From Octopus sinensis (lineage: Eukaryota), in NCBI RefSeq assembly GCF_006345805.1, contig NC_043008.1:59520001-59584000 (forward strand): 64,000 nt of DNA. Direction: 5' to 3'. The notes under the pieces were generated by a model. That model ran no database searches. It saw nothing but the letters and a program-made list of their open reading frames with translations, and was not told where the DNA came from. The position numbers and the translations under genes were made by a program. Every line of letters starts with the position of its first letter. Within the stretch, counting starts at the first letter, position 1. Of the stretch, positions 2,969 through 62,936 are shown piece after piece.

Positions 2969-3577
2969 GTGTATATATATATATGTATATATATGTATGT
3001 ATATATATGTATATATATGTATGTATATATATATGTGTGTATATATATGTATATATATGTATGTATATATATATGTATATATATATATGTATATATATGT
3101 ATGTATATATATATATGCATATATATATGCATATATATAATATATATATGTATATATATATATGTATGTATGTATATGTATATATATATATGCATATATA
3201 TATGCACATATATATATATGCATATATACATATGCATATATACATATGCATATATATTTATGTGTATATGTGTGTATATATATATGGATGCATATATATA
3301 TATATGTGTGTGTATTTATATATATGTATATATATATGTATTTATATGTATATATATATGTATTATATATGTACATATATATATATATATGTGTATATAT
3401 ATGTACATATATATATATGTGTATATATATATGTATTATATATATATGTGTGTGTGTGTATAAATATATATATGTATATATATATATGTGTGTGTGTATA
3501 TAAATATATATATGTATTATATATATATATAATATATATATATATATGTGTGTGTGTGTGGTGTGTGTGTGTATATA

Positions 3578-3641
<64 letters not shown>

Positions 3642-5171: not shown

Positions 5172-8100
5172 GTCGAACACGCGACAACCAACTTTGCACC
5201 TATTACACTGGTGAACCGTTTCACTATGAATTATTACATTGGTGACTTCCCGAACGTTGAATTTTTTTTTTCTTCGGAAATATTCCCCACCCTTGCAAAA
5301 CATTTCTGTAGGCCCGGGGGCCAAGCCTCGGATGAATTTTAAAGTTAAAACCTATATCATCTGGGCAATGTTGATGGAATATTTTCCACATCATACAGAT
5401 GATGTAACGCTCACGGCGGCGTTGGAGGGGGTAAGGCCTGAGCTTTTTGAGTCGATCCCAATAGTAGAGGCTTGTCATGTCATCTATTATTTTGTGATTG
5501 ATCTTTAGGTGGCTTCAATTTTCCTAATATTCTGTATCATGTGTGAGAATCACAGCTGACAACTGTAGTCAAGGTGAAGGCGAGGAAAAGTAGTGGCTGT
5601 GTGGTAAGTAGCTTGCTAACCAACCACATGGTTCTGGGTTCAGTCCCACTGTGTGGCACCTTGGACAAGTGTCTTCCACTATAGCCTCAGGCCGACCAAT
5701 GCCTTGTGAGTGGATTTGGTAGACGGAAACTGAAAGAAGCCTGCCGTATATATGTATATATATATATATGTATGTGTGTGTGTTTGTGTGTCTGTGTTTG
5801 TCCCCCTAGCATTGCTTGACAACCGTTGCTGGTGTGTTTACGTCCCCGTAACTTAGCGGTTCGGCAAAAGAGACCGATATAATAAGTACTGGGCTTACAA
5901 AGAATAATTCCCGGGGTCGATTTGCTCGACTAAAGGCGGTGCTCCAGCATGGCCGCAGTCAAATAACTGAAACACATAAAAGAGTAAAAGACCGGAAAGC
6001 CCTGAGGATTCAGGAGCATCCCCTGCTAGCCATGTAAACTTTGCTGCTTACGTGAGCACTCCAGCTTATTTCGTTTTTCAACAGTAACATCCAGGTCTCT
6101 AGCAGTGCTGGATGCCACGAGGGTTTCGCCCGAGGGAAGAGTGTATGGTTGTTGGAATGCAGTCTCTTTACCGAAGTGGATTAGTTTGAATCTTTTTTCG
6201 TTTAGCTGCATATGTTTCTCCGCACATTGGATAACAGCTAACAGATCAGATTGAAGATTTGCCTGGTCTTCAACCCTGTCAATAACCTTCAGTAAATTAG
6301 AGCCATCCTCGAAAATATGCATGCTACTGTTTTTGATGACGTCAGTGATGTTAATATAATTCATGAAAAGGTGCGGACCCAATGCAGTGCATTGTGGAAC
6401 TCTACTTATAACCCTGGCTGAGGTCGATCAGACACTATCAATCACCACATGTTGAGTTCTGTTCATGAGAAAACATTTAATCCAAGTTAACAGTTTTCCT
6501 TAGACTCCAATGTTGGATAGTTTCTTTAACAGGATGCAGTGATCAACCCTGTCAAGGGCTTTCCTGAAGTCAAGGTGTATGATATCTGCAATGGAGTCCT
6601 CTTCCATGGCCTTTCACATGTCATTGAAATGATGTAGGAACTGTGTTAAACAGTCCCTTCCATTGCGGAAGCCATGTTGGTTGGGAATAATCAAGCTGTT
6701 AGATCCCTAAAAGAGAGTTACTCGAGATCTCACCACTCTCTCAAATAATTTAATGATATGAGAGGTAAGCGAGACCGGCCGGTAGTTCACGGTGAGTGAC
6801 TTTTTACCTTTCTTGAAAACTGGGGTAATCGCCTGGGAAAGGAAATTTTCAGGGATATAGCCCGCATCCATTGATTTTCGCCAGAAAGTAGCTAAGGGAA
6901 GAGCTAACTGGAGTCGGTACTCCTTCAGGACTCTAGCGAGGAGCCTATCGGCGCCTGCAGCTGCGTTGACCTTTATTTCCCTAATAGCTGCTATGGTGTC
7001 CAAGGCGTCAAATGGTGTCAGAAATGGTGTGCTGTGGGTTTATTTTTCATATATGTTGACCAGGTTCACAATACTGGGATTGCAGAAGACAGAGCAGTAT
7101 TGTTTCTGCAGAATCCCAACCATATCTTCTGCAGTACTATGGAGAGTGTTTTCTTCACAATCAGAGGTCCGAGAGATGCGATTCTCTTCGGCAATCAGAA
7201 GTCCGACAGATGTTTTTTGGCAAATGAGAAGAAAACTTTGGGATTGAATTTGATATTCTCGATGGCCCATTTCTCCTGTTATTCTTTCATTCATAATGAT
7301 AGACTTCAAGCAGTTTTGGATTCCAGTAGAGCTACGTCTGACAGATGGGAGTGATGCAGCTGGCAATATTTTAGCCGGTTGATTTTTTTTTATCTATTCT
7401 TTTTATTTTTCTTATGAGTGACTTTTATATTTTTACGCAGCCTGCATTTTGTTTTGTCCATGGACCGCAGTGGAGTGTGGCGTGAACATATGTTTGCGAC
7501 AATATCCACAAATAACTGCCACAATGCGGCAATGCTACTTGGGGAGAGAGAGAATCAGTGAAAGACCAATCAAAGAGCGAAAGATCGTGGGTGATTACCT
7601 TCCAGTTAGCATTGTAGAGATCCGAGAGATCAAAAGGGTTCGCTTCTGTGTGGTAGTCGGGTTTTTCTCTAAGCTGCCGAAACCTCAGGCTACAAAGAAC
7701 CATATTGTGGTCTGATAGAAGAGTTTTCTCCACTGCTATATAATGGATAGTGTTTGTATGGTTACTTAACACTAAGTCCATAGTGTTTTTATTGAGTCTC
7801 GTTGACACGAGCACGAGTAGAGACACAAAGAATTCGTCCATGAATTCGAACAGTGATTCTACTGCTGCTTTCTCTGGGGTTGAAATGCACACACTTGTTT
7901 TCACTGTATGTGTAGTCCAGTCAATTCAAAGGGAGGTTAAAATTACCCATCATTAAAACGCTACCGGTTCTGCACTGGTTGATAAAAAAACTTGACTTTC
8001 TTGGGGTATTAGTCGAAGCACAGTAGTGATGCTTGTAGTGGCATGTAGAGCCCAATTATCACTAAGTCTTTTGTTTTATTATGTACGGATGGTGGTAAAT

Positions 8101-8520
8101 TTTTTTACTTTCCCTTTAGCATCCAGGTAGGAGTTATCAAGGTGAGTCTCAGTGAGGACAAAGAAGGGAATGTGGTGTGGGTGGTCGGTAACCCAATCTT
8201 CAATGAATTTAATTTTACACCGCTTTACCTTATAGAAAGGATTAATGCTTTGAGCATTCAGTAGAAATGTTGACACAGAAGTAGTGGCTTGATTGCACTT
8301 ACGAAGGGGCGTTGAAAAAGCTTTATGGCTTAACGGTAGCGAAGAGGATAGTTTCTTCTCTAGGGTAGTGACAGAGGTTGGTGCTGGGTGGTAGCCAAGA
8401 CACTTTTCCCGATCTCTTGTGTTCCATATGGATAAAAAAGAAGAATTTATCTGGTTAAGAAGTATTTGGTGACTGGAGTTGTGGTTACACTGACAGTTTG
8501 CTCGGTTGTTTGTGCTAACT
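5172..8520 (-). mobile_element. Decayed CR1-clade (CR1/L2-like) LINE ORF2: APE endonuclease plus reverse transcriptase
   Basis: Fragments FLLNAQSI...LTETHL and DLVLSN...LSDHNMV (endonuclease); PVFKKGKK...NYRPVSLTSHIIKLFERVV, QHGFR and HLDFRKALDRVDH (RT); YWDRLKKL..LQRRRERY (C-terminus). Multiple stops and frameshifts; interrupted by a SINE at 5581-5990. Confidence 0.9.
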
Positions 8521-8524
8521 TTGT

Positions 8525-8935
8525 TTCTTATTTCTTTATTGCCCACAACGGGCTAAACATAGAGAGGACAAACAAGGACAGACAAACGGATTAAGCCGAT
8601 TGCATCGACCCCAGTGCGTAACTGGTACTTAATTTATCGACCCCGAAAGGATGAAAGGCAAAGTCCACCTCGGCGGAATTTGAGCTCAGAACGTAACGAC
8701 AGACAAAATGCCTATTTCTTTACTGCCCACAAGGGGCTAAACATAGAGGGGACAGACAAAGGGATTAAGTCGATTACATCGACCCCAGTGCGTAACTTGT
8801 ACTTAATTTATCGACCCCGAAAGGATGAAAGGCAAAGGCGACCTCGGCGGAATTTGAACTCAGAACATAATGGCAGACGAAATACGGCTACGCATTTCGC
8901 CCGGCGTGCTAACGATTCTACCAGCTCGCCGCCTT
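8525..8935 (-). mobile_element. Family B SINE dimer inserted in the CR1-clade LINE; a second dimer lies at about 9671-10000 (+)
   Basis: Two tandem core modules interrupt the LINE sequence. Confidence 0.85.
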
Positions 8936-8939
8936 TGTG

Positions 8940-10140
8940 TTATTTTTCTTTATACCGAGAGTTCTGTTTATCTTATTTTTTTTTTTTTTACACTTGGGAA
9001 AGTCCGGGACTTTACGCTTTGTTTATGTATATGTTCATTCTGGCCAATTTTGGTATTTGGGTTGTGGGAAAAGTAGATGCCAGTACTAGAATTTGTTGTT
9101 GACTGGGTGCATTGATTTTGAACGTACGCCGAGTTCCAAGAAAATGCGTGAACATAAAGTCTTGCTGAAGACATAGTCTTCTATGTTGGGGGTTGCGACA
9201 GATTTTGGGGGTTACGAATAGATTTCAATTGATGGTGCTATTGCAGTAGGGGTGATATGGTTGAAAATGTTTCTATTTATAGAGTGTCTGGTCCCAGGCA
9301 AATGTGTGAAGCTGCAGTTAAGACTTCTGCATATCTCACGTAAAGAGTGGCAACATATGTTGGGGGTTCGGGTTGGACGTGTTCCCTGAGACAGTGGTTT
9401 GTAAATAGTTTTGGATTTAGTTAAGTTTGTCAGAGTTGACATTGGGGCAGTGGTGGTGGAGGGAGATGTGGTAGTTGGTCACTCACAGAGGTAGTAGTGA
9501 TAATGGTGCTATTTGAGTTTGGTAGTGTTGAGGTTGGGGCAAATGTGGTGGGAGAAGGAGGAGGGAGTGGTTGGTCACTGATCGTAATGGTAGCAGTACT
9601 AGACGAAGTATTAGTAGTCGATAGTAGTAGTGATGATGTTGCTGGTGTTGGTGATGAATGCCTGGAGGTGGAGGTCGACTTTGCCTTTCATCCTTTCGGG
9701 GTCGATTAAGTAAGTACCAGTTACGCACTGGGGTCGATGCAATCGGCTTAATCCGTTTGTCTGTCCTTGTTTGTCCCCTCTATGGTTAGCCCCTTGTGGG
9801 CAGTAAAGAAATAGGCATTTTGTCTGCCGCTACGTTCTGAGCTCAAATTCCGCCGAGGTCGACTTTGCCTTTCATCCTTTCGGGGTCGATTAAGTAAGTA
9901 CCAGTTACGCACTGGGGTCGATATAATCGACTTAATCCGTTTGTCTGTCCTTGTTTGTCCCCTCTGTGTATAGCTCCTTGTGGGTAGTAAAGAAATAGGT
10001 ATGTAGGCAGAGGAGTTCCTGTAGCTGTAGTCCTGACGGTGACTGCTGCTGCTGCTGCGATGGGAATTTTAATTGTTGTTGTTGTTGTTGCTGTTATTGC
10101 GGCTTTTGTTGTTGCTGCTTGTCATGGGCTGCGGTAGGTG
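8940..10140 (-). mobile_element. Probable ORF1 remnant of the same CR1-clade LINE
   Basis: Cys/His motif PNICCHSLREICRSLNCSFTHLPGT in ORF 9212-9442, upstream of and co-oriented with ORF2. Split by SINE insertions. Confidence 0.5.
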
Positions 10141-10619: not shown

Positions 10620-10679
10620 GGTGTGTGTGTGTGTACATAAATATATATATATGTATATATATATAGTTAATTCAAACAA

Positions 10680-11600
10680 GAAAGCACAAAAAACACAACA
10701 ACGCGAGGACGTGTAACAAATATATTAATTTTGGGACGCTCAGGAAAGACGGAAAGAAGGAGGGTTTAACGTTTCGAGCGGAGCTCTTCGTCGGAAACAT
10801 AGGAGAAGGAGAGATCCAGAGAAGGGAAGACAGAGGGAAAAGAATCGCCAACGGTACACATGAGGTCACATACTTGGAAAAGGATGTGTGGCGTTCGATC
10901 ATATAATAATATAAATAATATATAAATATATGCATATATTCATACATATATGTACATACCTACATATATATGTATATATACATGCTTATATGGGTACAGG
11001 TCATCAAAAAACGTTGAATACGATGAGAAACGAAAACATAAAACAAAAACATAGAAACTAACTTTTTTTCAAATAACGAAAAAACAGAGAAACGAGACAT
11101 ACAACATAAAGAATATTCTCCTTCTTCAGTTGTCCCTATTTCATCTACTCCGCCTTTTCCGAAGGCAAGGCCAAGATGCGACTTTGTTGAAACAGTCCTT
11201 CCCGCAAAACAAATTAAATAAAATTTGGGATTTTTTGCGGAGGGTGAAAGTGGTAACAAGAGCAGGACAGTGAGAACAAAACAGTAAAAACAATAAAAAA
11301 GTAAAAACAGTAAAAGACAGAACAAAGAGAACAAAACAGTAAAAACAAACGATGAGGGTTGTTAAGCCAAGAGGATGGAAAAATTATTCTGAACGTTTAA
11401 GGAGATGAGCTTATGAAGAGACAGGAAGGTAGTAGTCGGAAAGATGGCTTCCCTCTGACCACGTGTCAGCGATGAGAGAGTCGGTGAGGAGGAGTGAGAG
11501 AGAGGGAACGGTGAAGGGGAGAGGAGAAGAATAGGGAAAAGTGGGAGAGAAAACCAGAATGGATGAAGAACAAGAGAGCCCACCCTTTCCTATTCTTCTC
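10680..11600 (-). mobile_element. Probable Penelope-like element remnants (terminal-repeat region)
   Basis: Carries the hammerhead motif typical of Penelope-like terminal repeats. Shares GAGC..GCTCGAAACGT and downstream TTCCTGAGCG with the 62670-62870 copy. No RT or GIY-YIG domain recognised; boundaries approximate. Confidence 0.45.
10764..10798 (-). ncRNA. Minimal type I hammerhead ribozyme motif, variant core (CCGACGA)
   Basis: Minus strand reads GUUU CCGACGA A GAGC-UCC-GCUC GAAA C GUU AAAC. Stem I GUUU/AAAC, 4-bp stem II, palindromic AACGUU stem III. Confidence 0.6.
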
Positions 11601-11899: not shown

Positions 11900-12211
11900 G
11901 GCGATCCTACGGTTTAACTCGACAACACGATAACAAAACCTCCCTTGTTTCCGTGACAACTCGACAATTCACTTCGGATATCTTCGTGACCTCCGTGACA
12001 GCTTCTGTGACAGCGGCTAAAATGGGAGGAGGAGGAGAAGAAAACTAATGGAAGAGCAAGCACGCTCATACAACCCATTAGCTTTCTCCTCCTCCTCCCA
12101 TTTTAGTAGCTGTCACGGAGGTCATGAAGATATCCGAAGTGAATTGTCGAGTTGTCACGGAAACAAGCGAGGTTTTGTTATCGTTTTGTCGAGTTAAACC
12201 GAAGGATCGCC
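11900..12211. mobile_element. Foldback MITE with 8-bp TSD and GG...CC termini (Merlin-like; hAT not excluded)
   Basis: Arms of about 140-150 bp beginning GGCGATCC and ending GGATCGCC. TSD CACATTTA at 11892-11899 and 12212-12219. Confidence 0.8.
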
Positions 12212-15296: not shown

Positions 15297-17089
15297 TTTG
15301 GCCGACTGGCATGAATTTAGATTTTACTGCGCATTCATGAATTGGCTTCTATTTATCATTTATCCATATTGAAAATGTATTAATTTTAGTTCTGTACGAA
15401 CTAAACAAAAGAAGTACTGAAGATATTTAAACCTTAATGATGGATTTTTAAGAGAACGTCTTATCTGTTTCATTTTAGTCCCGATAAGCGAAATAATTTG
15501 AGTCAGATTTGTTTATCCAGAGGCCACATTCGAACTATATCTCCAACATTAGGTATAGCACAACTAGATCATTTTAACTGGCATGGGTTTTGGAATTCCA
15601 GAAAGCAAGTGCCAAATCCACTGACCTTTCTTAGTTGACTATGACCCTATAAGTCTAAGTAATGTCCAGTTTAGAATGCACGAGTTTGATCATAACGAGA
15701 ATCACCAGCATAGTGTCTCCATAATACCAGAAATTCATACATTATTCAGTTGAAGTAATAATATATGAGCTAAGTATACAGAAACAGTGGCAAAGAACAT
15801 GTGTAGATGGACCAAATATACAATTACATCACCATGAAGCGACCATGTACAATCTGTTTCCGGTGATTTTTCATGAGAACACAACCATTTGTACGACTCC
15901 TCAAAACTTACATCTTTACTAATACCTATTTCTTTACTACCCACAAGGGGCTGAACACAGAGAGGACAAACAAGGACAGACACACGGATTAATTCGATTA
16001 TATCGATCCCAGTACGTAACTGGTACTTAATTTATCGACCCCGAAAGGATGAAAGGCAAAGTCGACCTCGGCGGAATTTGAACTCAGAACGTAACGGCAG
16101 ACGAAATACGGCTACGCATTTCGCTCGGCGTGCTAACGTTTCTGCCAGCTCGCCGCCTTATCTTTGTTAATACCAGGGCTAAAAATATTATATTAGGGAG
16201 GCTCCGGCACTTTAAGTCCTGAGCTCAAATCTCGCCGAGGTCAGTTTTGTCTTTCATCTCTGTGGGGCCGGTTGAATGAAGTATCTGAGACCGATGGTCA
16301 CATCTAACCCTCTCCCCTCAAATTTACTGTAATTAAATTGTACGTTTCCACAGGAGACACAAATGTATTTTAATGAGTTTCGAGATACGTTAAGTCTGCT
16401 GACACCAACGTAACGAGGTAACCTCTACGTGGTCTCTCAACCAGCAAAATATTGCAGCTAAAATCTCCGTCGAACAAACTTAGGCGCTACCGTATTGAAA
16501 ATGAATTGACGCATTTGATAATGTAGCGCTAGTCAAGCAGCCCCTGAAAAAGAATGAGACGTAACCCTATTGATCTGCTCATTCAGTGTTTGCCTTGGAA
16601 TAATCAACAAGAATAGCATATAACATAAGCTAGCTGATACCGAACCTGACACGTTTGAAATATCAATAATTCTACTGTACATACATCAGTATTATCCCGT
16701 TACTCAATACATTTACTAATTGCAAATATAATTATTGATCTGACGCAGCCCTCCACTCCTCACTTCACTTCTTTCAAACCTTAAGTGTATACAACAAATA
16801 ATCCCCCAATTCTCTCCAAAGATCTGCAAAATACTGGTGAATGAAATTGGTGTCTGTTGTTTTACATACCTCTCTGTTTGACTCAAACTGGTTAGTAATA
16901 AACACTTCTTTTAATTAGGAATTACTTACTATACTGTCTCTTATTCTCTGTGATTGCATTCCTATCATAATTAACAGATAGTCTTCTAATTGAAACTTTT
17001 AAAGTAAGCAAAATAACGAGTCGGGGTAATGCCTGACTCCACAGTCTTATCTGTGACGATTTTTTGCACATCAACACTAGTATTCTACT

Positions 17090-17825
17090 GATTCTTATTT
17101 CATCGACCTCGATACATTGAAAGGCAAAGTAGACCTCGGCAGAATTTGACTTCAAAACTTAAAAACGGGTGAAATACCGCTAAGCATTTTGTCCAGCGTG
17201 CTAACGATTCTTTTCTACTCTAGGCACAAGACCCGGAATTTGGGGGGTGGGGGCTAGTCGATTAGATCGACCCCGATACGCAACTGGTACTTAATTTATC
17301 GACCCCGAAAGGATGAAAGGCGAGGTCGACCTCGGCGGAATTTGAACTCAGAACGTTAAGGCAGACGAAATATCGCTAAGCATTTCGCCCGGCGTGCTAA
17401 CGATTCTTATTTCTTTATTGCCCACAAAGGGCTAAACATAGAGGTGACAAAAAAGGACAGACAAAGAGATTAAGTCGATTACATCGACCCCAGTGTGTAA
17501 CTGGTATTTAATTTATCGACCCCGAAAGGATGAAAGGCAAAGTCGACCTCGGCGGAATTTGAACTCAGAACGTAGCGGCGGCACACGAAATACCTATTTC
17601 TTTACTACCCACAAGGGGCTAAACACAGAGAGGACAAACAAGGACAGACAAAGGGATTAAGTCGGTCATATCGACCTCAGTGCGTAACTGGTACTTATTT
17701 AATCGACCCCGAAAGGTTGAAAGGCAAAGTTGACTTCGACGGAATTTGAACTCAGAACGTAGCGGCAGACGAAATACTGCTGAGCATTTCGCCCGGCATG
17801 CTAACGATTCTGTCAGCTCGCTGCC
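17090..17825 (-). mobile_element. Head-to-tail chain of about four family B SINE units
   Basis: Repeated B-box/core modules joined at GGTATT or AGAAT microhomologies. Confidence 0.85.
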
Positions 17826-19647
17826 TTTCTATACGTGTGATAATACGACACTATCATAACTTCATTCAAAAGGTGAGTTCGATAATTTCTTGAAATGTAA
17901 ATGGAATTAGTAACGTTGTTCTTAATTAAACATAAAGAAGTAATCATTATTAACGTATATGATTTATATATTTGCCTGTAGGCTGCGATATGGTGTGGTG
18001 GAGATGACTCCATCAAAGCGTTGGGTGTTAAAAACCTGAATGTCATGGACTGGCGAGACAACTTACCCCAGATCCCTTTCAAGAGTGATGGACATCGATG
18101 TTTCGCTATTTTTGTGTGGCCTATCAAACATAACGCACTTGAACCGAATCCACGATTTATATGAATATAATGTAAAAACTATGTACCGGTATGCCCCGAC
18201 AATGCATACGTAAGAATAAATTCATATATGAAATAGAAGCAGCGCTAGTGCAATAATCTTTATCAACCACGCATACTTAACATTTATGAGTTGTGTTTTC
18301 CGGTAGTCTGCAACTGGGGTGATGAAGACTCCTCCATCAAAACGCCGAGTGTTAAAATACCTGAAAGTCATGGACAGGCGAGGCAACTCATCCCAGATCC
18401 CATTCAGAGGTGATGGACATCGATGTTTCGCCATATTTGAATGAAGAACTAATTAAAAAAATATGAAATGTTTAAGCTCAAATATTATATTAAGCTCAAA
18501 TACAGCGATGTCTTCCATATAACATATTTGAAATTTTTCTTATACGTATCGGTGTGTGCGTGTGTGTTGACGGCGAAGTGCCAGAATCTTTAGGGCATGG
18601 GATCAGGTACCTCGAGCATTTTTCCGGTTTTGCTGCGCTCTGAGTTCAAATCATACTGAAGTTATCTTTTCTTTTCATCATCTCGGGATCGATAAAATAA
18701 TCTGTCCAAGTCTGTAGTTTTGCGGTATTTGTTGTTGTAATATTTGTTCTGGCATTCTGCATTCTAAGTTTTTTACTGCTACACTTATTCCGTTGCCTAG
18801 CTTATCACCACTACTAGGTCCTTGGATGTCTTCAACAGAGTCCACTCAGTTACAAGCATTCAAGCTATGCCGCTATTTTGAGAGTACCGTTCTTCCTATA
18901 TGCCATCAGCCTTGAAGTCTCTGTAGAAATAAAATTCGCTGGCCTTCTCTCCTTGACTAAAAAAGAAGAAACTGTCAGATTAAATATTTTCCATTAATTA
19001 CTTGATAGGAGTCGGCAAACTATAGAACCGTTAGCGAATAGGACAAAATCATTAGTGTCATTTCTTCCGGCTCTTTACATTCCAGGTTAGAATTCCGCCG
19101 GGGTTGTCTTTGTTTGTCATCAGTTCGCGGTCGATAAAATAAGTACCTGTGGAACACTAGGGTCGATGTAAACTACTTACCCTCTACCTTAGAATTGCTG
19201 GCACTATGCTAAATTTATGATTATTTTTCATTGGGTCACGTTTCTTTTTGTGGGGAAGTAGTCAAGGAATGGCCAATTAAACTTAACATTAACCTTTTAT
19301 AAATGATACTAAATACATAAGCTACGTCGCTGATGTCATACGGATTTTATAAACTTTCGAGAAATTATGAGATAATCCTTTTTTTTTTGTTATTTGTTTG
19401 TTTGTTTTTTTCTTGGATCAGTGGATCTCGAAGCACATAAAGCTATACATAATACCATGTAAATTATCAAATTGAAAAACTCTTTTGGACAGAAAAAAAC
19501 ACTAGCAACCATCGAATTTTTCTATTTATAAGCGTTTTCTTTTTCAACCCAATATGTACATTTATAGCTTTGTACGCTTCGAGATCCACCGTCCCAACGA
19601 CTTATTTCGTTTATTTAACTCAACCTTTATATGTATCGGTATTTCAG

Positions 19648-22598: not shown

Positions 22599-22702
22599 GT
22601 AAGTAATCACTTTGTTCGCCGCACCAAACTTAGTTCTTAAGCAGTTTGAATTTGCGGTTTCTAATTACTACATGGCCGACTAACTGCAATGCAAAGAAGA
22701 TG

Positions 22703-22790: not shown

Positions 22791-23140
22791 GCTATATGCG
22801 ACATCAGAGTTTGAAGAGATGCTGATATTCCATGTACCATAACAACGAGAGTTGCCTTGTTTGCGGTGACCGGACGCCTACTACTGATGATGTCCAGTAG
22901 AATGAAATCACGGGATATGGGAGTTCCAACGCCCATAATAGATGATTCTCGTCTACTACGATCTATTTTTGTGCTTTATACAACAAACGTTTATATGACA
23001 GACTCTCTCAAGGCTAATAAGGCAATATTCGGAGTTCTAACAAGATATCACATTAAATTGGATATCAAGTTTGCCTTATATACATACATACATACATACA
23101 CACATACATACATACATACATACATACATACATACATACA

Positions 23141-23174
<34 letters not shown>

Positions 23175-23822
23175 GATATATAACTAGGGAAAAGATTTAA
23201 CAAATGTCTTTTTATCGCTAGCTTTGAAAGCCACATGATTGCACACAACGCCAATTTTCATTATTCTGCATTACATTTAACAAAGGCGAAACACAATTAT
23301 TTCCAATATATTTATTCTGCGCTATCAAAGAACTTATTAGGTTTCTTTGACAAAGAAACCAGTCCGAAAAGCTCGACTCCTCTTCCTCGCAATTTACAAA
23401 GTAAACAAAAATTTCACAAAGTAAACTTTTTGTGCATTTCTTTATATTTTCTTAATAATTCTTTCGTTAATAGTTTGGCTGATAAAAGGCGGCAAGCTGA
23501 CAGAATGGCACTTTGGGTAGAATGCTTAGCAGCATTTCGTCTGCCTTTACGTTCTGAATTCAAATTCTGCCGTGGTAGACTTTACCTTTCATCCTCTAGG
23601 GGTCGATAAGATAAGTACTTGTTGAGGACTCGGGTAGGTGTAATCGACTTGGGGTCGATAAGATAAGTACTAGTTGAGGACTAGGGTAGGTGTAATCGGC
23701 TTATCCCCACCCACGAAATTGGTGGCCTTGTATCAAAACTTGAAATCAATATTTTAGGAGAGTAAAGGCGGTGAGCTGGCAGAATCGTTAACACGTTGGG
23801 CAAAATTCTTAGCGGCAAAATT

Positions 23823-23995
23823 CATCAGCAAAAATTACTTTAGGAACGAGAACCCAGGGTTGGGTTCAAAATTCTACCAGGACGCCTGATGAAGGCTGGA
23901 GAGTAACTCAACCGAAACGTTGTGTTAACAACAAACAAGACAAGGACACATATCTGTCCAAGGTGAATAATGTAAATAATGTGCACTTTGTATAT
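23823..23995 (+). mobile_element. Probable Penelope-like terminal-repeat fragment
   Basis: Short non-coding insert between SINE remnants, centred on a hammerhead motif. Boundaries approximate. Confidence 0.5.
23882..23925 (+). ncRNA. Minimal type I hammerhead ribozyme motif, canonical core
   Basis: Reads ACGC CUGAUGA A GGCUGGAGAGUAACUCAACC GAAA C GUU GUGU. Stem I ACGC/GUGU, stem II closed by GG/CC, palindromic AACGUU stem III, predicted cut after 23921. Confidence 0.72.
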
Positions 23996-24039
23996 TATAA
24001 AACATTGCGACTAATCTCTATCTTGATTTGTTCTTTTAG

Positions 24040-24174
24040 GTTCATAGCTTCGCTATCATATTATGGATTGTATCTTACATCAGGATCTTTGGAAGGAAGC
24101 CATTACTTAAACTTCTTCCTTAATTCTTTTTGCGAAATGTTAGCAATGAGCACGTTGTGGAAAGGTTTTGAATG
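24040..24174 (+). CDS. SLC22: SLC22-family transporter exon (TM7-TM8)
   Basis: ttttag|G TTC ATA ... GAA TG|gtacgt. Translates WFIASLSYYGLYLTSGSLEGSHYLNFFLNSFCE, matching the YYGL...YLNF...E pattern. Confidence 0.93.
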
Positions 24175-31239: not shown

Positions 31240-34950
<3,711 letters not shown>

Positions 34951-35792
34951 GGAGGAGGAGGAGGAGAGATGTACAAAGAATTAGAAAAGAAAAAAACCAA
35001 GAAAAAGAGAAGACGAGTTCGAATCCCGCCGACGTCTGATTTGCCTTTCATCTAATCGTGGGGTCGATAAAGTAAGTACCTCTCGAGCACTGAAGTCGAT
35101 GCAATCGACTAGTCCCCTCCCACAAAATTTCTGGCCTTGTGAAAGAATTATTATTGAGCAGTATTGGCAAAATAATCAGATATACTCAGGAAATCCCTTC
35201 TCAAATATGAGGCCATATGCCTTTGTTAAGAAATCAGTAAAGATATTTATTGTTATTTTTCATGTAGTATTCCAGCATACAGTCTAATTAATATTGTGGG
35301 CAATAAAGAAATATATATTTCTTTACTACCCACAAGGGGCTAAACATAGAGGGGACAAACAAGGACTGACAAAGGGATTAAGTTGATTAAATCGACCCCA
35401 GTGCGTAACTGGTACTTAATTTATCGACCCCGAAAGGATGAAAAGCAAAGTCGACTTCAGTGGAATTTGAACTCAGAACGTAACGGCAGACGAAAAACGA
35501 CTACGCATTTCGCCCGGCGTGCTAACGCCTCTGCCAGCTCGCCGCCTTAGGGCAATAAAGAAATATATTAAGGCGGCGAGCTAGCAGAATCGTTACCGAA
35601 GCGGAGAAAAGTACGTAAAGGCATTTCTTCTGATTTCCCATTCTGAGTTCAAATGCCGCCTAGATCGATTTCGCCTTCCGTGTCGATAAAATAAATACCA
35701 GTTGAATACTAAGGGTTGATGTAAGAAATTTACACCCTCTCCCAAAATTGCTAGCCAAAATATGGAACCAATATTAATTCTGCTAATTAAAA

Positions 35793-37257: not shown

Positions 37258-37490
37258 TGGTGTAGGCAGAATCGTTAGCACGCCGGGCGAAATGCTTAGA
37301 GGTATTTCGTCTGCCGTTACGTTCTGAGTTCAAATTCCGCCGAGGTCGACTTAGCCTTTCATCCTTTCGGGGTCGATTAAATAAGTACCAGTTACGCACT
37401 GGGGGTCGATGTAATCGACTTAATCCGTTTGTCTGTCCGTGTTTGTCCCCTCTGTGTTTAGTCCCTTGTGGGTAGTAAAGAAATAGGTAT
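37258..37490 (+). mobile_element. SINE family B monomer (tRNA head plus Meta-domain-like core)
   Basis: B box GAGTTCAAATTCC and core GCCTTTCATCCTTTCGGGGTCGATTAAATAAGTACC resembling the MetaSINE domain. Many further copies, e.g. 108-260, 15920-16160, 31995-32210, 35310-35550, 45925-46160, 52020-52480, 57170-58180 and 63735-63945. Confidence 0.88.
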
Positions 37491-38295
37491 TGTCTTTGGT
37501 TATTTTAAGGAAAGTATCAGGTTTGTAATTCAAATTGATTTGTCGAAAACATGTGGAGAATGTCTCGTTTTTTTCTGTTTTATGTATTAACTGATTTGGT
37601 TTGAATTATTTTTATGTATTTTCTGCAAGACATAAATCACATCTTTTTTCTCCTGTCTATAGCTTTATTGTTTTTCAGTTTTTGTTTTCCCTTACTTTTT
37701 TTTCTTTCTTTCCATGCCTTCTCCCTCCTGGTTGAACAAACGTTTTACAGTATATGTAGTTAAGTTAATAAGGGTATCTTCAAGCAGTATTGTTTGTACA
37801 AGTTAAGCGAATTAATAAAGCCATACAGAATGGGTTTCTGTTAAACAATTTCTTTCACTTATTTTCGAAAATGCCTTGTCTCTACAACCAATATTTCTGT
37901 ATAAATGTCTTATACGAAATTGTCAAAATTGTACAAAATCTACGGGAGTTCATACACTATTCATACTTCGCACTGTCGATCAATCGTATCTTATTATCAA
38001 CATATCTTTTGAGAAGAAAATATTAATAAAAGTATGAAAAAACTTAGAAAATACTATTACATTTCTTCTATATCTGAGACTGAACGAAGTTCTCAGCGGT
38101 TTTTTTGTTCTGTTTCCAGTGTGAAATATAATCGTACACAGTTAAGATTATATTTGCAAATATAACCGACGGAGTGTCAGTGTGCGTGGATGTTTGTGTT
38201 GTCAGGAAATAAATAACTGTTTAAAAATACCTATTTCTTTGGTTTACTCCTTGACTGTCAATTGACGTTTGTACATATATATATATATATATATT

Positions 38296-45533: not shown

Positions 45534-46875
45534 TACGTACGTACACATACAAACATGCATGAAGGTTGACTCGTCTTTGTCAGGTGATAGACTTCTCACA
45601 TTCAGGCTGATTGTTCTAATCTACCTTCATCCTTGCATGTGTGCCAAGCATGCATTACCATAGGACATTATTCGATAAAAAAGAAAACGGATCAAGAAAT
45701 GAAATAATAATAAGAAATCTATACGTCATTGTGTTTAAATGACAAAAGCTTGTACAAACATTTTTACCTGTCTCTCGGTTGCCATGGTAGGTTCCAGTTA
45801 TAAGCACGATGATTGGTACTATTTTGACTACAAGTTTTATATCAGAGTATTTTTCTCAGCTGAGTTGGTATCAAACGGCTTAAATTTATACACATTATTG
45901 AGTTAGTATTTGCTTCTCCCTAGAGGCGGTGAGATAGCAGAAACGTTAGCACACCAGGCAGAAATGCTTAGCGGTATTTCGTGTGCCGTTACGGTCTGAG
46001 TTCAAATTCCGCCGAGGTCGACTTTGCCTTTCATCCTTTTGGGGTCGATTAAATAAGTACCAGTTACGCACTGAGGTCGATGTAATCGACTTAATCCCTT
46101 TGTCTGGCCTTGTTTGTTTCCTCGATGTTTAGCACCCCCCGTGAGCAATAAAGAAATAAATATTTTCTTCTCTTCTCTATAAATATTAATCAGATTTTTC
46201 CATCTGCAGGTCTTGGCTTGACTATACATAAAGAGAAAGAAGTGGAATAAACGGAGAAAACGAAAAACAAAGGAGCGAAAAAATATAAGAAAAAGATAGA
46301 TGTGGGGAAAATAAGAGTTAATTTAATATTTCATTTCACTTTTCTTTTTTTTTTTCAGTTTTTATTTGTTTCAGTCAATTAGATTACGCTATGCTGGGGT
46401 AACATCTTGAAGGGTTTAGTCGAAAACATCGCCCCTAATGGGGTTGTTTTTTTTTTATCTATTCTATCGGTCTCTTTTTGTCAAACCGCTTTGTTACGGG
46501 GACGTAAACACACCGATACCGGGTTTTCAAACGATAATGGGGACAAAGATACACACAGACGCACACACACACACACACATACACACAAACATATATGTGT
46601 ATATGTACACACACACACACACATAAATATGTGTGTATGTGTGTGTATATATATATAGATATATATTCTTTTTTCTTTTACTTGTTTCAGTCATTTGACT
46701 GTGGCCATGCTGGAGCACCGCCTTGACGGATGATTTTAGTCAATCCAATCGACACCAGGATTTTCTTTTTAAACCTAGTACTTTATTGCCGAACCGCTAA
46801 TCTACGGGGATGTAAACACACCTAAACCGGTTGTCGAGCGGTGATGGGGGGACAAGCACAGACATAAAGGCACAA

Positions 46876-62190: not shown

Positions 62191-62585
62191 TTGCATATAT
62201 ATGTATATATTTATATATATATATAATTCAACTTACGTTGGAAGTCAACAAAGTTTGCTTTAGAAGCGTTGAGATGTTTTGAAAGATACACATAAAGACA
62301 TAATTTTATTCTCAAACGCAGGATAATGCTAATAATATCGCATGAACAGGATAAGCTATCCGTATTCTGCAAAATATGGATAGATTATCCTGTTCATGCT
62401 GTATTATTAGCATTATCCTGCGTTTGAGAATAAAATAATTTCCTTATCTATATATGTGTGTGTGTGTGTGTGTGTATAAAACGGAGTAAGCACATAAATG
62501 TGAAACAAGGTGGAAAAAAGGAGTACTCAAATACCAGAGGTAGAGTAATATGCTTTATTTAAAAGCAGTAGAAATATAACAAAAG

Positions 62586-62623
62586 CTGTTACTCAGAGTT
62601 TCACGTTCCCGTTCGTCGGACAG
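62586..62623 (-). ncRNA. Minimal type I hammerhead ribozyme motif, variant core (CCGACGA)
   Basis: Minus strand reads CUGU CCGACGA ACG-GGAA-CGU GAAA CUCUGAG UA ACAG. All three stems pair; stem I extends via AAAA/UUUU with a 1-nt bulge. Confidence 0.65.
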
Positions 62624-62735
62624 TTTTGTTAAAATCTGTATGTATATATATGTGTATATATATATATATTGATTCGCTAGCTCCTGCACGCATTTTTTTC
62701 TCTCCTTGTTTCTCTCCGTGTTTCTTTTCTGTGTA

Positions 62736-62773
62736 TCTTTCTGTTGAAGAGCGTAGGCTCGAAACGTAAAAGA
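62736..62773 (+). ncRNA. Minimal type I hammerhead ribozyme motif with A6U core change
   Basis: Reads UCUUU CUGUUGA A GAGC-GUAG-GCUC GAAA C GUA AAAGA. 5-bp stem I and 4-bp stem II. Confidence 0.6.
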
Positions 62774-62868
62774 CTTGTTTTATTTATATTCCTGAGCGCT
62801 ATACTAATACAATTGTTTGTTTGTATTCAACCTGCCTTCGTCTTTTGTTTATTTTCATAAAGCTTCCC

Positions 62869-62936
<68 letters not shown>

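What the first reader, a model, noticed from the sequence alone, without database searches (positions are those of the whole stretch)
23882..23925. Canonical hammerhead ribozyme motif on the sense strand of an SLC22 intron, about 115 nt upstream of a 3' splice site
Seen: a complete CUGAUGA/GAAA/GUU core, paired stems I and II, an extra A after A9, and a palindromic AACGUU stem III, all in the pre-mRNA orientation just before the exon at 24040. Established: Penelope-like elements carry minimal type I hammerheads that work best as dimers, and an extra A between A9 and G10.1 is tolerated in natural viroid hammerheads. Inference: this copy could cut the nascent intron, possibly only when two transcripts pair through the palindrome, which would affect splicing or output of the transporter gene.
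Basis: partly seen in the sequence, partly recalled or inferred. Interest (0 to 1): 0.78.

Follow-up and report, generated by a model that had tools for sequence, protein, structure and literature searches.

The report
Relic minimal hammerhead ribozyme in intron
The hammerhead ribozyme motif is real and not a chance match, but it is a lone copy of the stem-III-less "minimal" hammerhead that Penelope-like retroelements scatter through invertebrate genomes, so it is most likely transposon debris in the intron and not a regulator of the transporter gene.

Summary
It has every invariant hammerhead core base, a 5-bp helix I, G10.1-C11.1, an extra A after A9 and GAAACGUU with no loop 3. It lies in a 1441-nt sense-strand intron of an SLC22-type gene, 118 nt before the acceptor.

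It is not chance. A descriptor that just admits it expects about 3.5e-5 hits per window and found none in 40 Mb of simulated sequence. The window holds two more motifs of the same build (62736-62773 +, 10763-10799 -). Each has one core mutation and sits in a roughly 200-nt element inside (TA)n. That makes three against 0.02 expected.

It is not a canonical hammerhead. No Rfam hammerhead model matches, even at E<=10. The "odd" features match the published Penelope-like-element min-HHR, which is mostly found as solo copies and cleaves weakly, only as dimers.

Helix III cannot form in one molecule, and no partner lies in the intron or anywhere near. Pairing two transcripts through ACGU has a Kd of about 0.06 M. 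The active fold is about 6 kcal/mol worse than a fold that buries the CUGAUGA box.

Verdict: a retroelement relic, fused to a tRNA-like SINE head, very probably inert for the host gene. It is a new member of a known kind, of low to moderate interest.

The parts
23881..23885 (+). Helix I, 5' strand (GACGC). It also lies at the end of the stretch homologous to the SINE head.
   Evidence: Pairs with 23922-23926. The nhmmer SINE alignment ends at 23886.
23886..23892 (+). Core box CUGAUGA (C3-A9), intact
   Evidence: Sequence; descriptor hit with 0 mismatches.
23893..23893 (+). Unpaired extra A between A9 and G10.1, a hallmark of PLE min-HHRs
   Evidence: Sequence; PMC4209133.
23894..23913 (+). Helix II with loop 2: G10.1-C11.1, G-C, C.A mismatch, U-A, G-C, G.U, and an 8-nt loop
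   Evidence: Pair list and energy evaluation.
23914..23917 (+). Core box GAAA (G12 A13 A14 A15.1)
   Evidence: Sequence.
23917..23920 (+). ACGU (A15.1 C15.2 G16.2 U16.1). This is a palindromic half of helix III with zero loop. It can pair only with a second copy.
   Evidence: Sequence; duplex energies; PMC4209133.
23921..23922 (+). U17 and G1.1: the predicted scissile bond lies between these two bases
   Evidence: Position follows from the core numbering. No cleavage data exist.
23922..23926 (+). Helix I, 3' strand (GUGUU)
23766..23886 (+). tRNA-like SINE head (A/B-box region), homologous to positions 2-99 of the 237-nt SINE that is abundant in the window. The homology stops at the hammerhead core.
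   Evidence: nhmmer E=3.4e-11; alignment A1; self-BLAST.
23928..23961 (+). AC-rich tract followed by the hairpin GGACA-CAUAUC-UGUCC, just 3' of the hammerhead. It may correspond to the AC-rich stem-loop where a PLE reverse transcriptase starts. This is inference only.
   Evidence: Fold; PMC11167929.
22599..24039 (+). Host intron (GT...AG) of the SLC22-type gene. It also contains (GT)n, (CATA)n and a second SINE copy at about 23475-23700.
   Evidence: exons confirmed.
62736..62773 (+). Motif B: a second min-HHR (UCUUU|CUGUUGA|A|GAGC-GUAG-GCUC|GAAA|CG|U|A|AAAGA) with an A6-to-U core mutation. It sits in a roughly 200-nt element at 62670-62870 that is flanked by (TA)n.
10763..10799 (-). Motif C: a third min-HHR (UGUUU|CCGACGA|A|GAGC-UCC-GCUC|GAAA|CG|U|U|AAACC) with a U4-to-C core mutation. 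It sits in a roughly 230-nt element at 10668-10899 that is flanked by (TA)n.

Best explanation
This is a genuine minimal type I hammerhead ribozyme motif of the kind carried by Penelope-like retroelements (PLE min-HHR). It arrived in the intron as part of retroelement debris.

The core is fully intact, but the motif has no helix III of its own. Its ACGU half-site must pair with the same half-site of a second hammerhead, normally the next copy in a tandem or pLTR transcript, to build the active double hammerhead.

Here the copy is solitary. It is joined directly to the tRNA-like head of a SINE and has a slightly damaged helix II. It therefore most likely never folds into the active form in the pre-mRNA and has no effect on splicing of the SLC22-type gene.

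Shown: the presence and statistics of the motif, its fit to the published architecture, sister motifs in the same window, the absence of a partner, and the unfavourable energetics. Inferred: the PLE origin, since no PLE coding sequence is present, and the inactivity in vivo.
For: Motif and numbering.

Not chance: 0 hits in 40 Mb of simulated sequence and about 3.5e-5 expected per window. Three motifs of the class 'extra base plus no loop 3' occur in the window against 0.02 expected.

Sister motifs B and C each carry a different single core mutation, which implies an intact ancestor. They are reciprocal nhmmer hits (E 6e-4 and 2e-3). Each sits in a short element bounded by (TA)n, a target preference reported for some PLE clades (PMC8557442).

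Penelope elements are reported as abundant and recently active in octopus genomes (PMC13282606, PMC8967140). This applies only if the window is from an octopus, which rests on my memory of the SINE and was not tested.

Inertness: no partner motif nearby; intermolecular Kd of about 0.06 M; the active fold is about 6 kcal/mol above the MFE.
Against: No reverse transcriptase or GIY-YIG remnant is present in the window, so the PLE link rests on motif architecture and the literature alone.

No second copy of this particular hammerhead family (its helix II and flanks) is in the window, and none could be retrieved from outside. Family membership and covariation are therefore untested for this copy.

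The 5' strand of helix I falls inside the SINE-homologous stretch. That is unexpected for a simple PLE fragment lying next to a SINE.

The intact core and three retained CpGs could hint at constraint.

Pair counts across A, B and C are biased, because the three were found with a descriptor that demands pairing.
Confidence: 0.72

Rival explanations
1. Composite SINE: the unit at about 23766-23961 is one roughly 200-nt non-autonomous retroelement. It would have a Pol III tRNA-like head and a PLE-type 3' module (min-HHR plus AC-rich hairpin), the cephalopod counterpart of the schistosome Sm-alpha/Sj-alpha hammerhead SINEs, and would be mobilised by a PLE reverse transcriptase. This is a refinement of the origin, not of the function, and it is compatible with the best explanation.
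For: SINE homology runs through the B-box and ends at the end of the tRNA-like part (model position 99), exactly where the hammerhead core begins. The helix I 5' strand is supplied by the head. The head differs from the abundant family by about 23 extra nt, so it may be a separate subfamily. The total size is typical of a SINE. An AC-rich hairpin follows the ribozyme, and a PLE reverse transcriptase starts in an AC-rich stem-loop (PMC11167929). A 2026 preprint argues that animal retrozymes are non-autonomous partners of PLEs.
Against: There is only one copy, so no family is shown. No target-site duplication was found; only a 7-mer recurs, as expected by chance. The extra length in the head looks like local slippage of GCAAAATTC, so it may simply be an old copy of the common SINE. 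Elements B and C carry min-HHRs without any SINE head.
Confidence: 0.3
2. Chance: a hammerhead-like string that arose by accident in diverged SINE or intron sequence.
For: No Rfam hammerhead hit. The bare two-box pattern is not enriched. There is a mismatch in helix II and two G.U pairs in helix I. The descriptor was written after seeing the site, and the scan as a whole covered an unknown number of windows.
Against: About 3.5e-5 hits are expected per window, and even a loose descriptor gives 0.0016. Two further motifs of the same unusual build occur in the same 64 kb, against 0.02 expected.
Confidence: 0.06
3. Functional intronic ribozyme: the motif cleaves the nascent SLC22 pre-mRNA, through transcript-transcript pairing or with a chaperone, and tunes splicing or output.
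For: The core is intact and on the sense strand, 118 nt upstream of the acceptor and upstream of a likely branch site (CUAAU at about 24011). Conserved intronic hammerheads exist in amniotes (own knowledge).
Against: Helix III cannot form in one molecule, and the Kd for trans pairing is about 0.06 M to 3 mM. A competing fold is about 6 kcal/mol better. There is no nearby partner. Published min-HHRs are inactive as monomers (PMC4209133). From my own knowledge, untested here: only fast-cleaving ribozymes placed in introns disturb co-transcriptional splicing, and exon tethering tolerates intron cuts.
Confidence: 0.03

Closest known systems
Minimal hammerheads of Penelope-like elements (min-HHR; Cervera & de la Pena 2014, PMC4209133; Lunse, Weinberg & Breaker 2017)
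   Same: Type I topology, 4-5 bp open helix I, an unpaired base between A9 and G10.1, G10.1-C11.1, no helix III or loop 3 with palindromic 15.2-16.2, occurrence mostly as scattered solo copies, and dependence on a dimer.
   Different: No PLE ORF or pLTR is recognisable around it. Helix II has a mismatch and an 8-nt loop instead of a clean 6-8 bp stem. It is joined directly to a tRNA-like SINE head.
Sm-alpha / Sj-alpha SINE-like hammerhead elements of schistosomes
   Same: A Pol III-type tRNA-like promoter region is followed by a type I hammerhead with a helix III too weak to act as a monomer.
   Different: Those carry canonical hammerheads with loop-loop contacts and a small helix III, and they are high-copy families. 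Here there is a single copy with no helix III at all.
Rfam Hammerhead_1 (RF00163) and other canonical hammerheads
   Same: The same 11 invariant core bases and the same predicted cleavage chemistry.
   Different: It does not reach any Rfam hammerhead model even at E<=10. It has no helix III hairpin and no loop 1/loop 2 tertiary contacts.
Conserved intronic hammerheads of amniotes (HH9, HH10)
   Same: Sense-strand location inside an intron of a protein-coding gene.
   Different: Those fold stably as monomers and are conserved across orthologues. This one cannot fold alone, and its conservation is unknown.
Viroid hammerhead with an extra A after A9 (CChMVd plus strand; De la Pena & Flores 2001, cited in PMC4209133)
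   Same: An extra unpaired base at the same core position is tolerated.
   Different: That is a type III hammerhead in a replicating circular RNA, with full helices.

Membership tests
PLE-type minimal hammerhead (min-HHR) | Invariant core C3 U4 G5 A6 N7 G8 A9 ... G12 A13 A14 A15.1 ... U16.1 H17 | tested here: met
   All bases are present at 23886-23892, 23914-23917 and 23920-23921.
PLE-type minimal hammerhead (min-HHR) | Type I topology with a short (4-5 bp) helix I | tested here: met
   23881-23885 pairs with 23922-23926: 5 pairs, of which 3 are Watson-Crick and 2 are G.U.
PLE-type minimal hammerhead (min-HHR) | Unpaired nucleotide between A9 and G10.1 | tested here: met
   A23893. Motifs B and C have the same feature.
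PLE-type minimal hammerhead (min-HHR) | G10.1-C11.1 closing a long helix II (6-8 bp) | tested here: inconclusive
   G23894-C23913 is present. Of the first 6 positions, 5 pair (one C.A mismatch, one G.U), and the loop is 8 nt.
PLE-type minimal hammerhead (min-HHR) | No helix III or loop 3; positions 15.2-16.2 palindromic so that two copies build helix III | tested here: met
   A15.1 C G U16.1 = ACGU with zero loop.
PLE-type minimal hammerhead (min-HHR) | Lies in a pLTR of a Penelope-like element (RT plus GIY-YIG ORF nearby) | tested here: not met
   No long ORF and no YxDD or GIY..YIG motif in six frames of the window. The literature says most copies are solo, so this weakens the assignment but does not exclude it.
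PLE-type minimal hammerhead (min-HHR) | Belongs to a within-genome consensus family with compensatory changes in the helices | not testable with these tools
   No other copy of this helix II or these flanks is in the window, and no eukaryotic genome collection was reachable. A different family (B and C) is present, with a C-G versus G-C swap at 2.4-1.4, but that comparison is subject to ascertainment bias.
PLE-type minimal hammerhead (min-HHR) | Self-cleavage as a dimer or tandem, not as a monomer | not testable with these tools
   This needs in vitro transcription assays.
Canonical type I hammerhead (Rfam RF00163) | Covariance-model score at or above the gathering threshold; helix III hairpin; loop 1/loop 2 contacts | tested here: not met
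   No hammerhead family is reported at the gathering score or at E<=10 in 23600-24100. There is no helix III hairpin.
Hammerhead-bearing SINE (Sm-alpha-like) | tRNA-like Pol III head immediately upstream of the ribozyme | tested here: met
   nhmmer aligns 23766-23886 to SINE head positions 2-99, E=3.4e-11.
Hammerhead-bearing SINE (Sm-alpha-like) | A repeated family sharing the same head-ribozyme junction, with target-site duplications | tested here: inconclusive
   Single copy in 64 kb and no significant flanking direct repeat. The genome-wide test was not possible.
Conserved intronic regulatory hammerhead (HH9/HH10-like) | Stable monomeric fold and conservation in orthologous introns | tested here: not met
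   The monomer cannot form helix III, and the hammerhead fold is about 6 kcal/mol above the MFE. Conservation is not testable here.

The most novel reading that the evidence does not exclude
The solitary min-HHR is kept intact because it does cleave the nascent SLC22 intron in vivo, for example through protein- or chaperone-assisted pairing of two nascent transcripts at the gene locus. That would make it a transposon-derived ribozyme co-opted to tune a transporter gene. A milder novel reading, with probability about 0.3, is that it marks a so far undescribed cephalopod SINE family with a tRNA-like head and a PLE hammerhead tail.
Probability: 0.03. Interest if true: 0.8.

Novelty: new member of a known kind. 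Interest (0 to 1): 0.3.

Why it matters
The finding shows that a hand-read hammerhead can be a true motif even when Rfam is silent, because the Rfam hammerhead models reported nothing for this stem-III-less variant. It adds a cephalopod-like genome to the animals that carry such motifs, with three copies in only 64 kb. That fits the picture of thousands of ribozyme fossils per genome. Its direct junction with a tRNA-like SINE head is a lead on how PLE modules may be borrowed by non-autonomous elements. It does not, on present evidence, say anything about regulation of the transporter gene.

Tried and rejected
- Rfam at gathering threshold over the window, at E<=10 over 501 nt and at E<=10 over the window. 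No hammerhead was reported. The weak hits are microsatellite artefacts (mir-297 and similar).
- The second CTGATGA...GAAA string in the same intron (22884-22907). It has no G10.1-C11.1 pair and no U16.1, and its similarity to the candidate's flanks is not significant (9 of 300 shuffles score as high). Rejected as a partner.
- Search for other copies of 23810-24039 in the window by blastn-short and nhmmer --max. None found.
- Target-site duplication search. Only the 7-mer TTTTAGG recurs, as expected by chance.
- PLE coding remnants, searched by six-frame regex for YxDD and GIY..YIG. None in the window or in L001.
- Outside sequences:
  - The protein search with the SLC22 exons found nothing at 1e-10.
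  - Exact-ORF look-ups found nothing.
  - The viral contigs pattern scan gave 0 hits.
  - The single metagenome scan gave one contig, L001 at 3558-3590. It has the same 15-mer CCTGATGAAGGCTGG and an AUAU palindrome, but a weak helix I and no flank homology. It is uninformative.
- Literature search for the SINE sequence to fix the species. Nothing found. The Lunse 2017 paper is not held.
- Organism. The SINE consensus matches my memory of the abundant Octopus SINE, but no tool confirmed the species.
- Covariance model R1, built from A, B and C. Nothing else in the window scores above 10.2 bits.

Full report
**What is there.** On the + strand, 23881-23926 reads GACGC|CUGAUGA|A|GGCUGGAGAGUAACUCAACC|GAAA|CG|U|U|GUGUU. 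In standard hammerhead numbering:
- C3-A9 = 23886-23892.
- An extra A lies at 23893.
- G10.1 = 23894 and C11.1 = 23913.
- G12-A15.1 = 23914-23917.
- C15.2, G16.2 and U16.1 = 23918-23920.
- U17 = 23921, so the predicted scissile bond is between 23921 and 23922.

Helix I has five pairs: G.U, A-U, C-G, G.U and C-G. Helix II has G-C, G-C, a C.A mismatch, U-A, G-C, G.U and an 8-nt loop. After A15.1 come only C and G before U16.1. A hairpin helix III is therefore sterically impossible, and ACGU can pair only with another ACGU.

**Gene context.**
- The intron runs from the GT at 22599 to the AG at 24038-24039.
- The joined exons keep the reading frame.
- They match Pfam MFS_1 and Sugar_tr.
- Among solved structures they match only SLC22 members (OCTN2, OCT1-3, URAT1, OAT4).
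- The motif is on the sense strand, 118 nt before the exon.

**Is it chance?** The two boxes alone are not informative: CTGATGA-N(6-36)-GAAA occurs 3 times against 1.49 expected. The full arrangement is informative.
- A descriptor that only just admits the site finds it and nothing else in the window.
- It finds nothing in 40 Mb of order-2 Markov sequence scanned on both strands. A much looser descriptor gives 1 hit per 40 Mb, or 0.0016 per window.
- Multiplying the base and pair frequencies gives about 3.5e-5 per window.

Allowing one mismatch uncovered two more motifs of the same peculiar build:
- B, 62736-62773 (+): UCUUU|CUGUUGA|A|GAGC-GUAG-GCUC|GAAA|CG|U|A|AAAGA.
- C, 10763-10799 (-): UGUUU|CCGACGA|A|GAGC-UCC-GCUC|GAAA|CG|U|U|AAACC.

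Both have the extra A, G10.1-C11.1 and ACGU with no loop 3. Each has one core mutation, at different positions (A6U in B, U4C in C), which implies an intact ancestor. B and C find each other by nhmmer (E 6e-4 and 2e-3). Each lies in a 200-235-nt element bounded on both sides by (TA)n. For the class 'at most 1 mismatch, extra base, no loop 3', 0.02 hits are expected per window and three are seen. So this genome carries real families of such motifs, and the candidate is the one copy in the window with an intact core.

**What kind of hammerhead.** It is not canonical. No Rfam hammerhead model reports it at the gathering score or at E<=10 in a 501-nt search. A likely reason is that those models expect a helix III, though I did not inspect the models.

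- Helix I of 4-5 bp and a long helix II.
- Palindromic 15.2-16.2 with no helix III or loop 3.

The same paper reports thousands of copies per genome, mostly solitary. Monomers show no detectable self-cleavage, and dimers cleave only weakly, largely at non-physiological Mg2+. For a biochemically active PLE, hammerhead mutants did not affect insertion, and no RNA-seq reads ended at the ribozyme site (PMC11167929). Penelope elements are reported as abundant and recently active in octopus genomes. The window looks cephalopod to me, because its abundant 237-nt SINE matches my memory of the Octopus SINE. No tool could confirm the species.

**Surroundings.** The intron is full of repeats: (GT)n, (CATA)n, one SINE copy at about 23475-23700 and a second SINE head at 23766-23886.
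- An HMM built from six window copies aligns the second head to SINE positions 2-99 (E=3.4e-11). The homology ends exactly at C3 of the hammerhead, so the 5' strand of helix I is supplied by the end of the tRNA-like part.
- From 23887 onward there is no similarity to the SINE body or to anything else in the window.
- Downstream lie an AC-rich tract and a GGACA/UGUCC hairpin (23928-23961). These recall the AC-rich stem-loop where a PLE reverse transcriptase initiates, but that is only a resemblance.
- No RT or GIY-YIG remnant is present, and no target-site duplication was found.

Two origins remain open. One is a very short PLE 3' fragment fused to a truncated SINE. The other is a composite SINE with a tRNA-like head and a PLE-type hammerhead tail, analogous to the schistosome Sm-alpha elements. 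A genome-wide search would decide between them, and I had no eukaryotic genome collection to search.

**Does it work here?** Very probably not.
1. No partner motif lies in the intron. B is 39 kb downstream on the same strand with a dead core, and C is on the other strand.
2. Pairing two separate transcripts through ACGU has a predicted dG of -1.7 kcal/mol (Kd about 0.06 M). Through AACGUU it is -3.5 kcal/mol (about 3 mM), and that pairing would also trap A14 and U17.
3. The hammerhead fold of 23876-23931 scores -6.7 to -7.1 kcal/mol against an MFE of -12.7. The MFE structure locks CUGAUGA into a GCCU/AGGC hairpin.
4. The published behaviour of this class is described above.
5. From my own knowledge, untested here: only fast ribozymes placed in introns disturb co-transcriptional splicing.

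**Verdict.** The classification as a PLE-type dimer-dependent hammerhead is supported. The proposed effect on the transporter gene is not supported. The finding is a new member of a known, very numerous class. The SINE junction and the three motifs in 64 kb are the only mildly new points.

Noticed in passing
window 62670-62870 (+), motif at 62736-62773: A roughly 200-nt element bounded by (TA)n on both sides carries a min-HHR with an A6-to-U core mutation: CT-rich upstream arm, GAGC/GCUC helix II, ACGU palindrome.
   Followed up: partly
window 10668-10899 (-), motif at 10763-10799: A roughly 230-nt element, also bounded by (TA)n, is homologous to the one at 62.7 kb (nhmmer E about 1e-3). Its min-HHR has a U4-to-C mutation. 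Helix I position 2.4-1.4 is G-C here and C-G in the other copy.
   Followed up: partly
window 62585-62624 (-): A possible fourth, inverted and degenerate hammerhead: ACUGU|CCGACGA|ACG-GGAA-CGU|GAAA|CUC-U-GAG|U|A|ACAG. It lies just across the (TA)n from element B. It scores only 9.7 bits (E about 5.5) with my model. Inverted adjacent copies are typical of PLE insertions.
   Followed up: no
window, about 30 places (e.g. 45921-46150 +, 37265-37500 +, 8670-8945 -, 15890-16168 -, 17560-17837 -, 35280-35557 -, 23475-23700 +): A very abundant 237-nt tRNA-like SINE (AAGGCGGCGAGCTGGCAGAA...GTAGTAAAGAAATAGG), often in tandem or nested pairs. Its CpG sites are heavily decayed in older copies.
   Followed up: partly
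window 31810-31889 (-): Rfam U4 snRNA match, just above the gathering score (46.3 against 46 bits). It covers only the 5' 80 nt or so of the model and is probably a truncated U4 pseudogene or retrocopy.
   Followed up: no
window 16986-17138 (+): U12 minor-spliceosomal snRNA-like match over the full model length but below gathering (43.2 against 53 bits), in a SINE-rich stretch.
   Followed up: no
window about 12004-12118: A long, near-perfect hairpin that attracts many unrelated plant and animal miRNA models on both strands. It is probably a MITE-like inverted repeat.
   Followed up: no
window 7425-8546 (-): Two adjacent ORFs (155 and 159 aa) whose motifs look like an apurinic-type (EEP) endonuclease of a LINE (...TETHL..., ...SDHNMV...). 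This rests on reading the motifs only. It looks like a 5' LINE fragment, not a PLE.
   Followed up: no
L001 3558-3590 (+) (metagenome contig ERZ1740055 NODE-16902): An AT-rich, eukaryote-like contig with CCUGAUGA-A-GGCUGG...CUAACC-GAAA-UAUU. It has the same helix II 5' strand and an AUAU palindrome, but a poor helix I, no flank homology to the window and no PLE ORF.
   Followed up: partly
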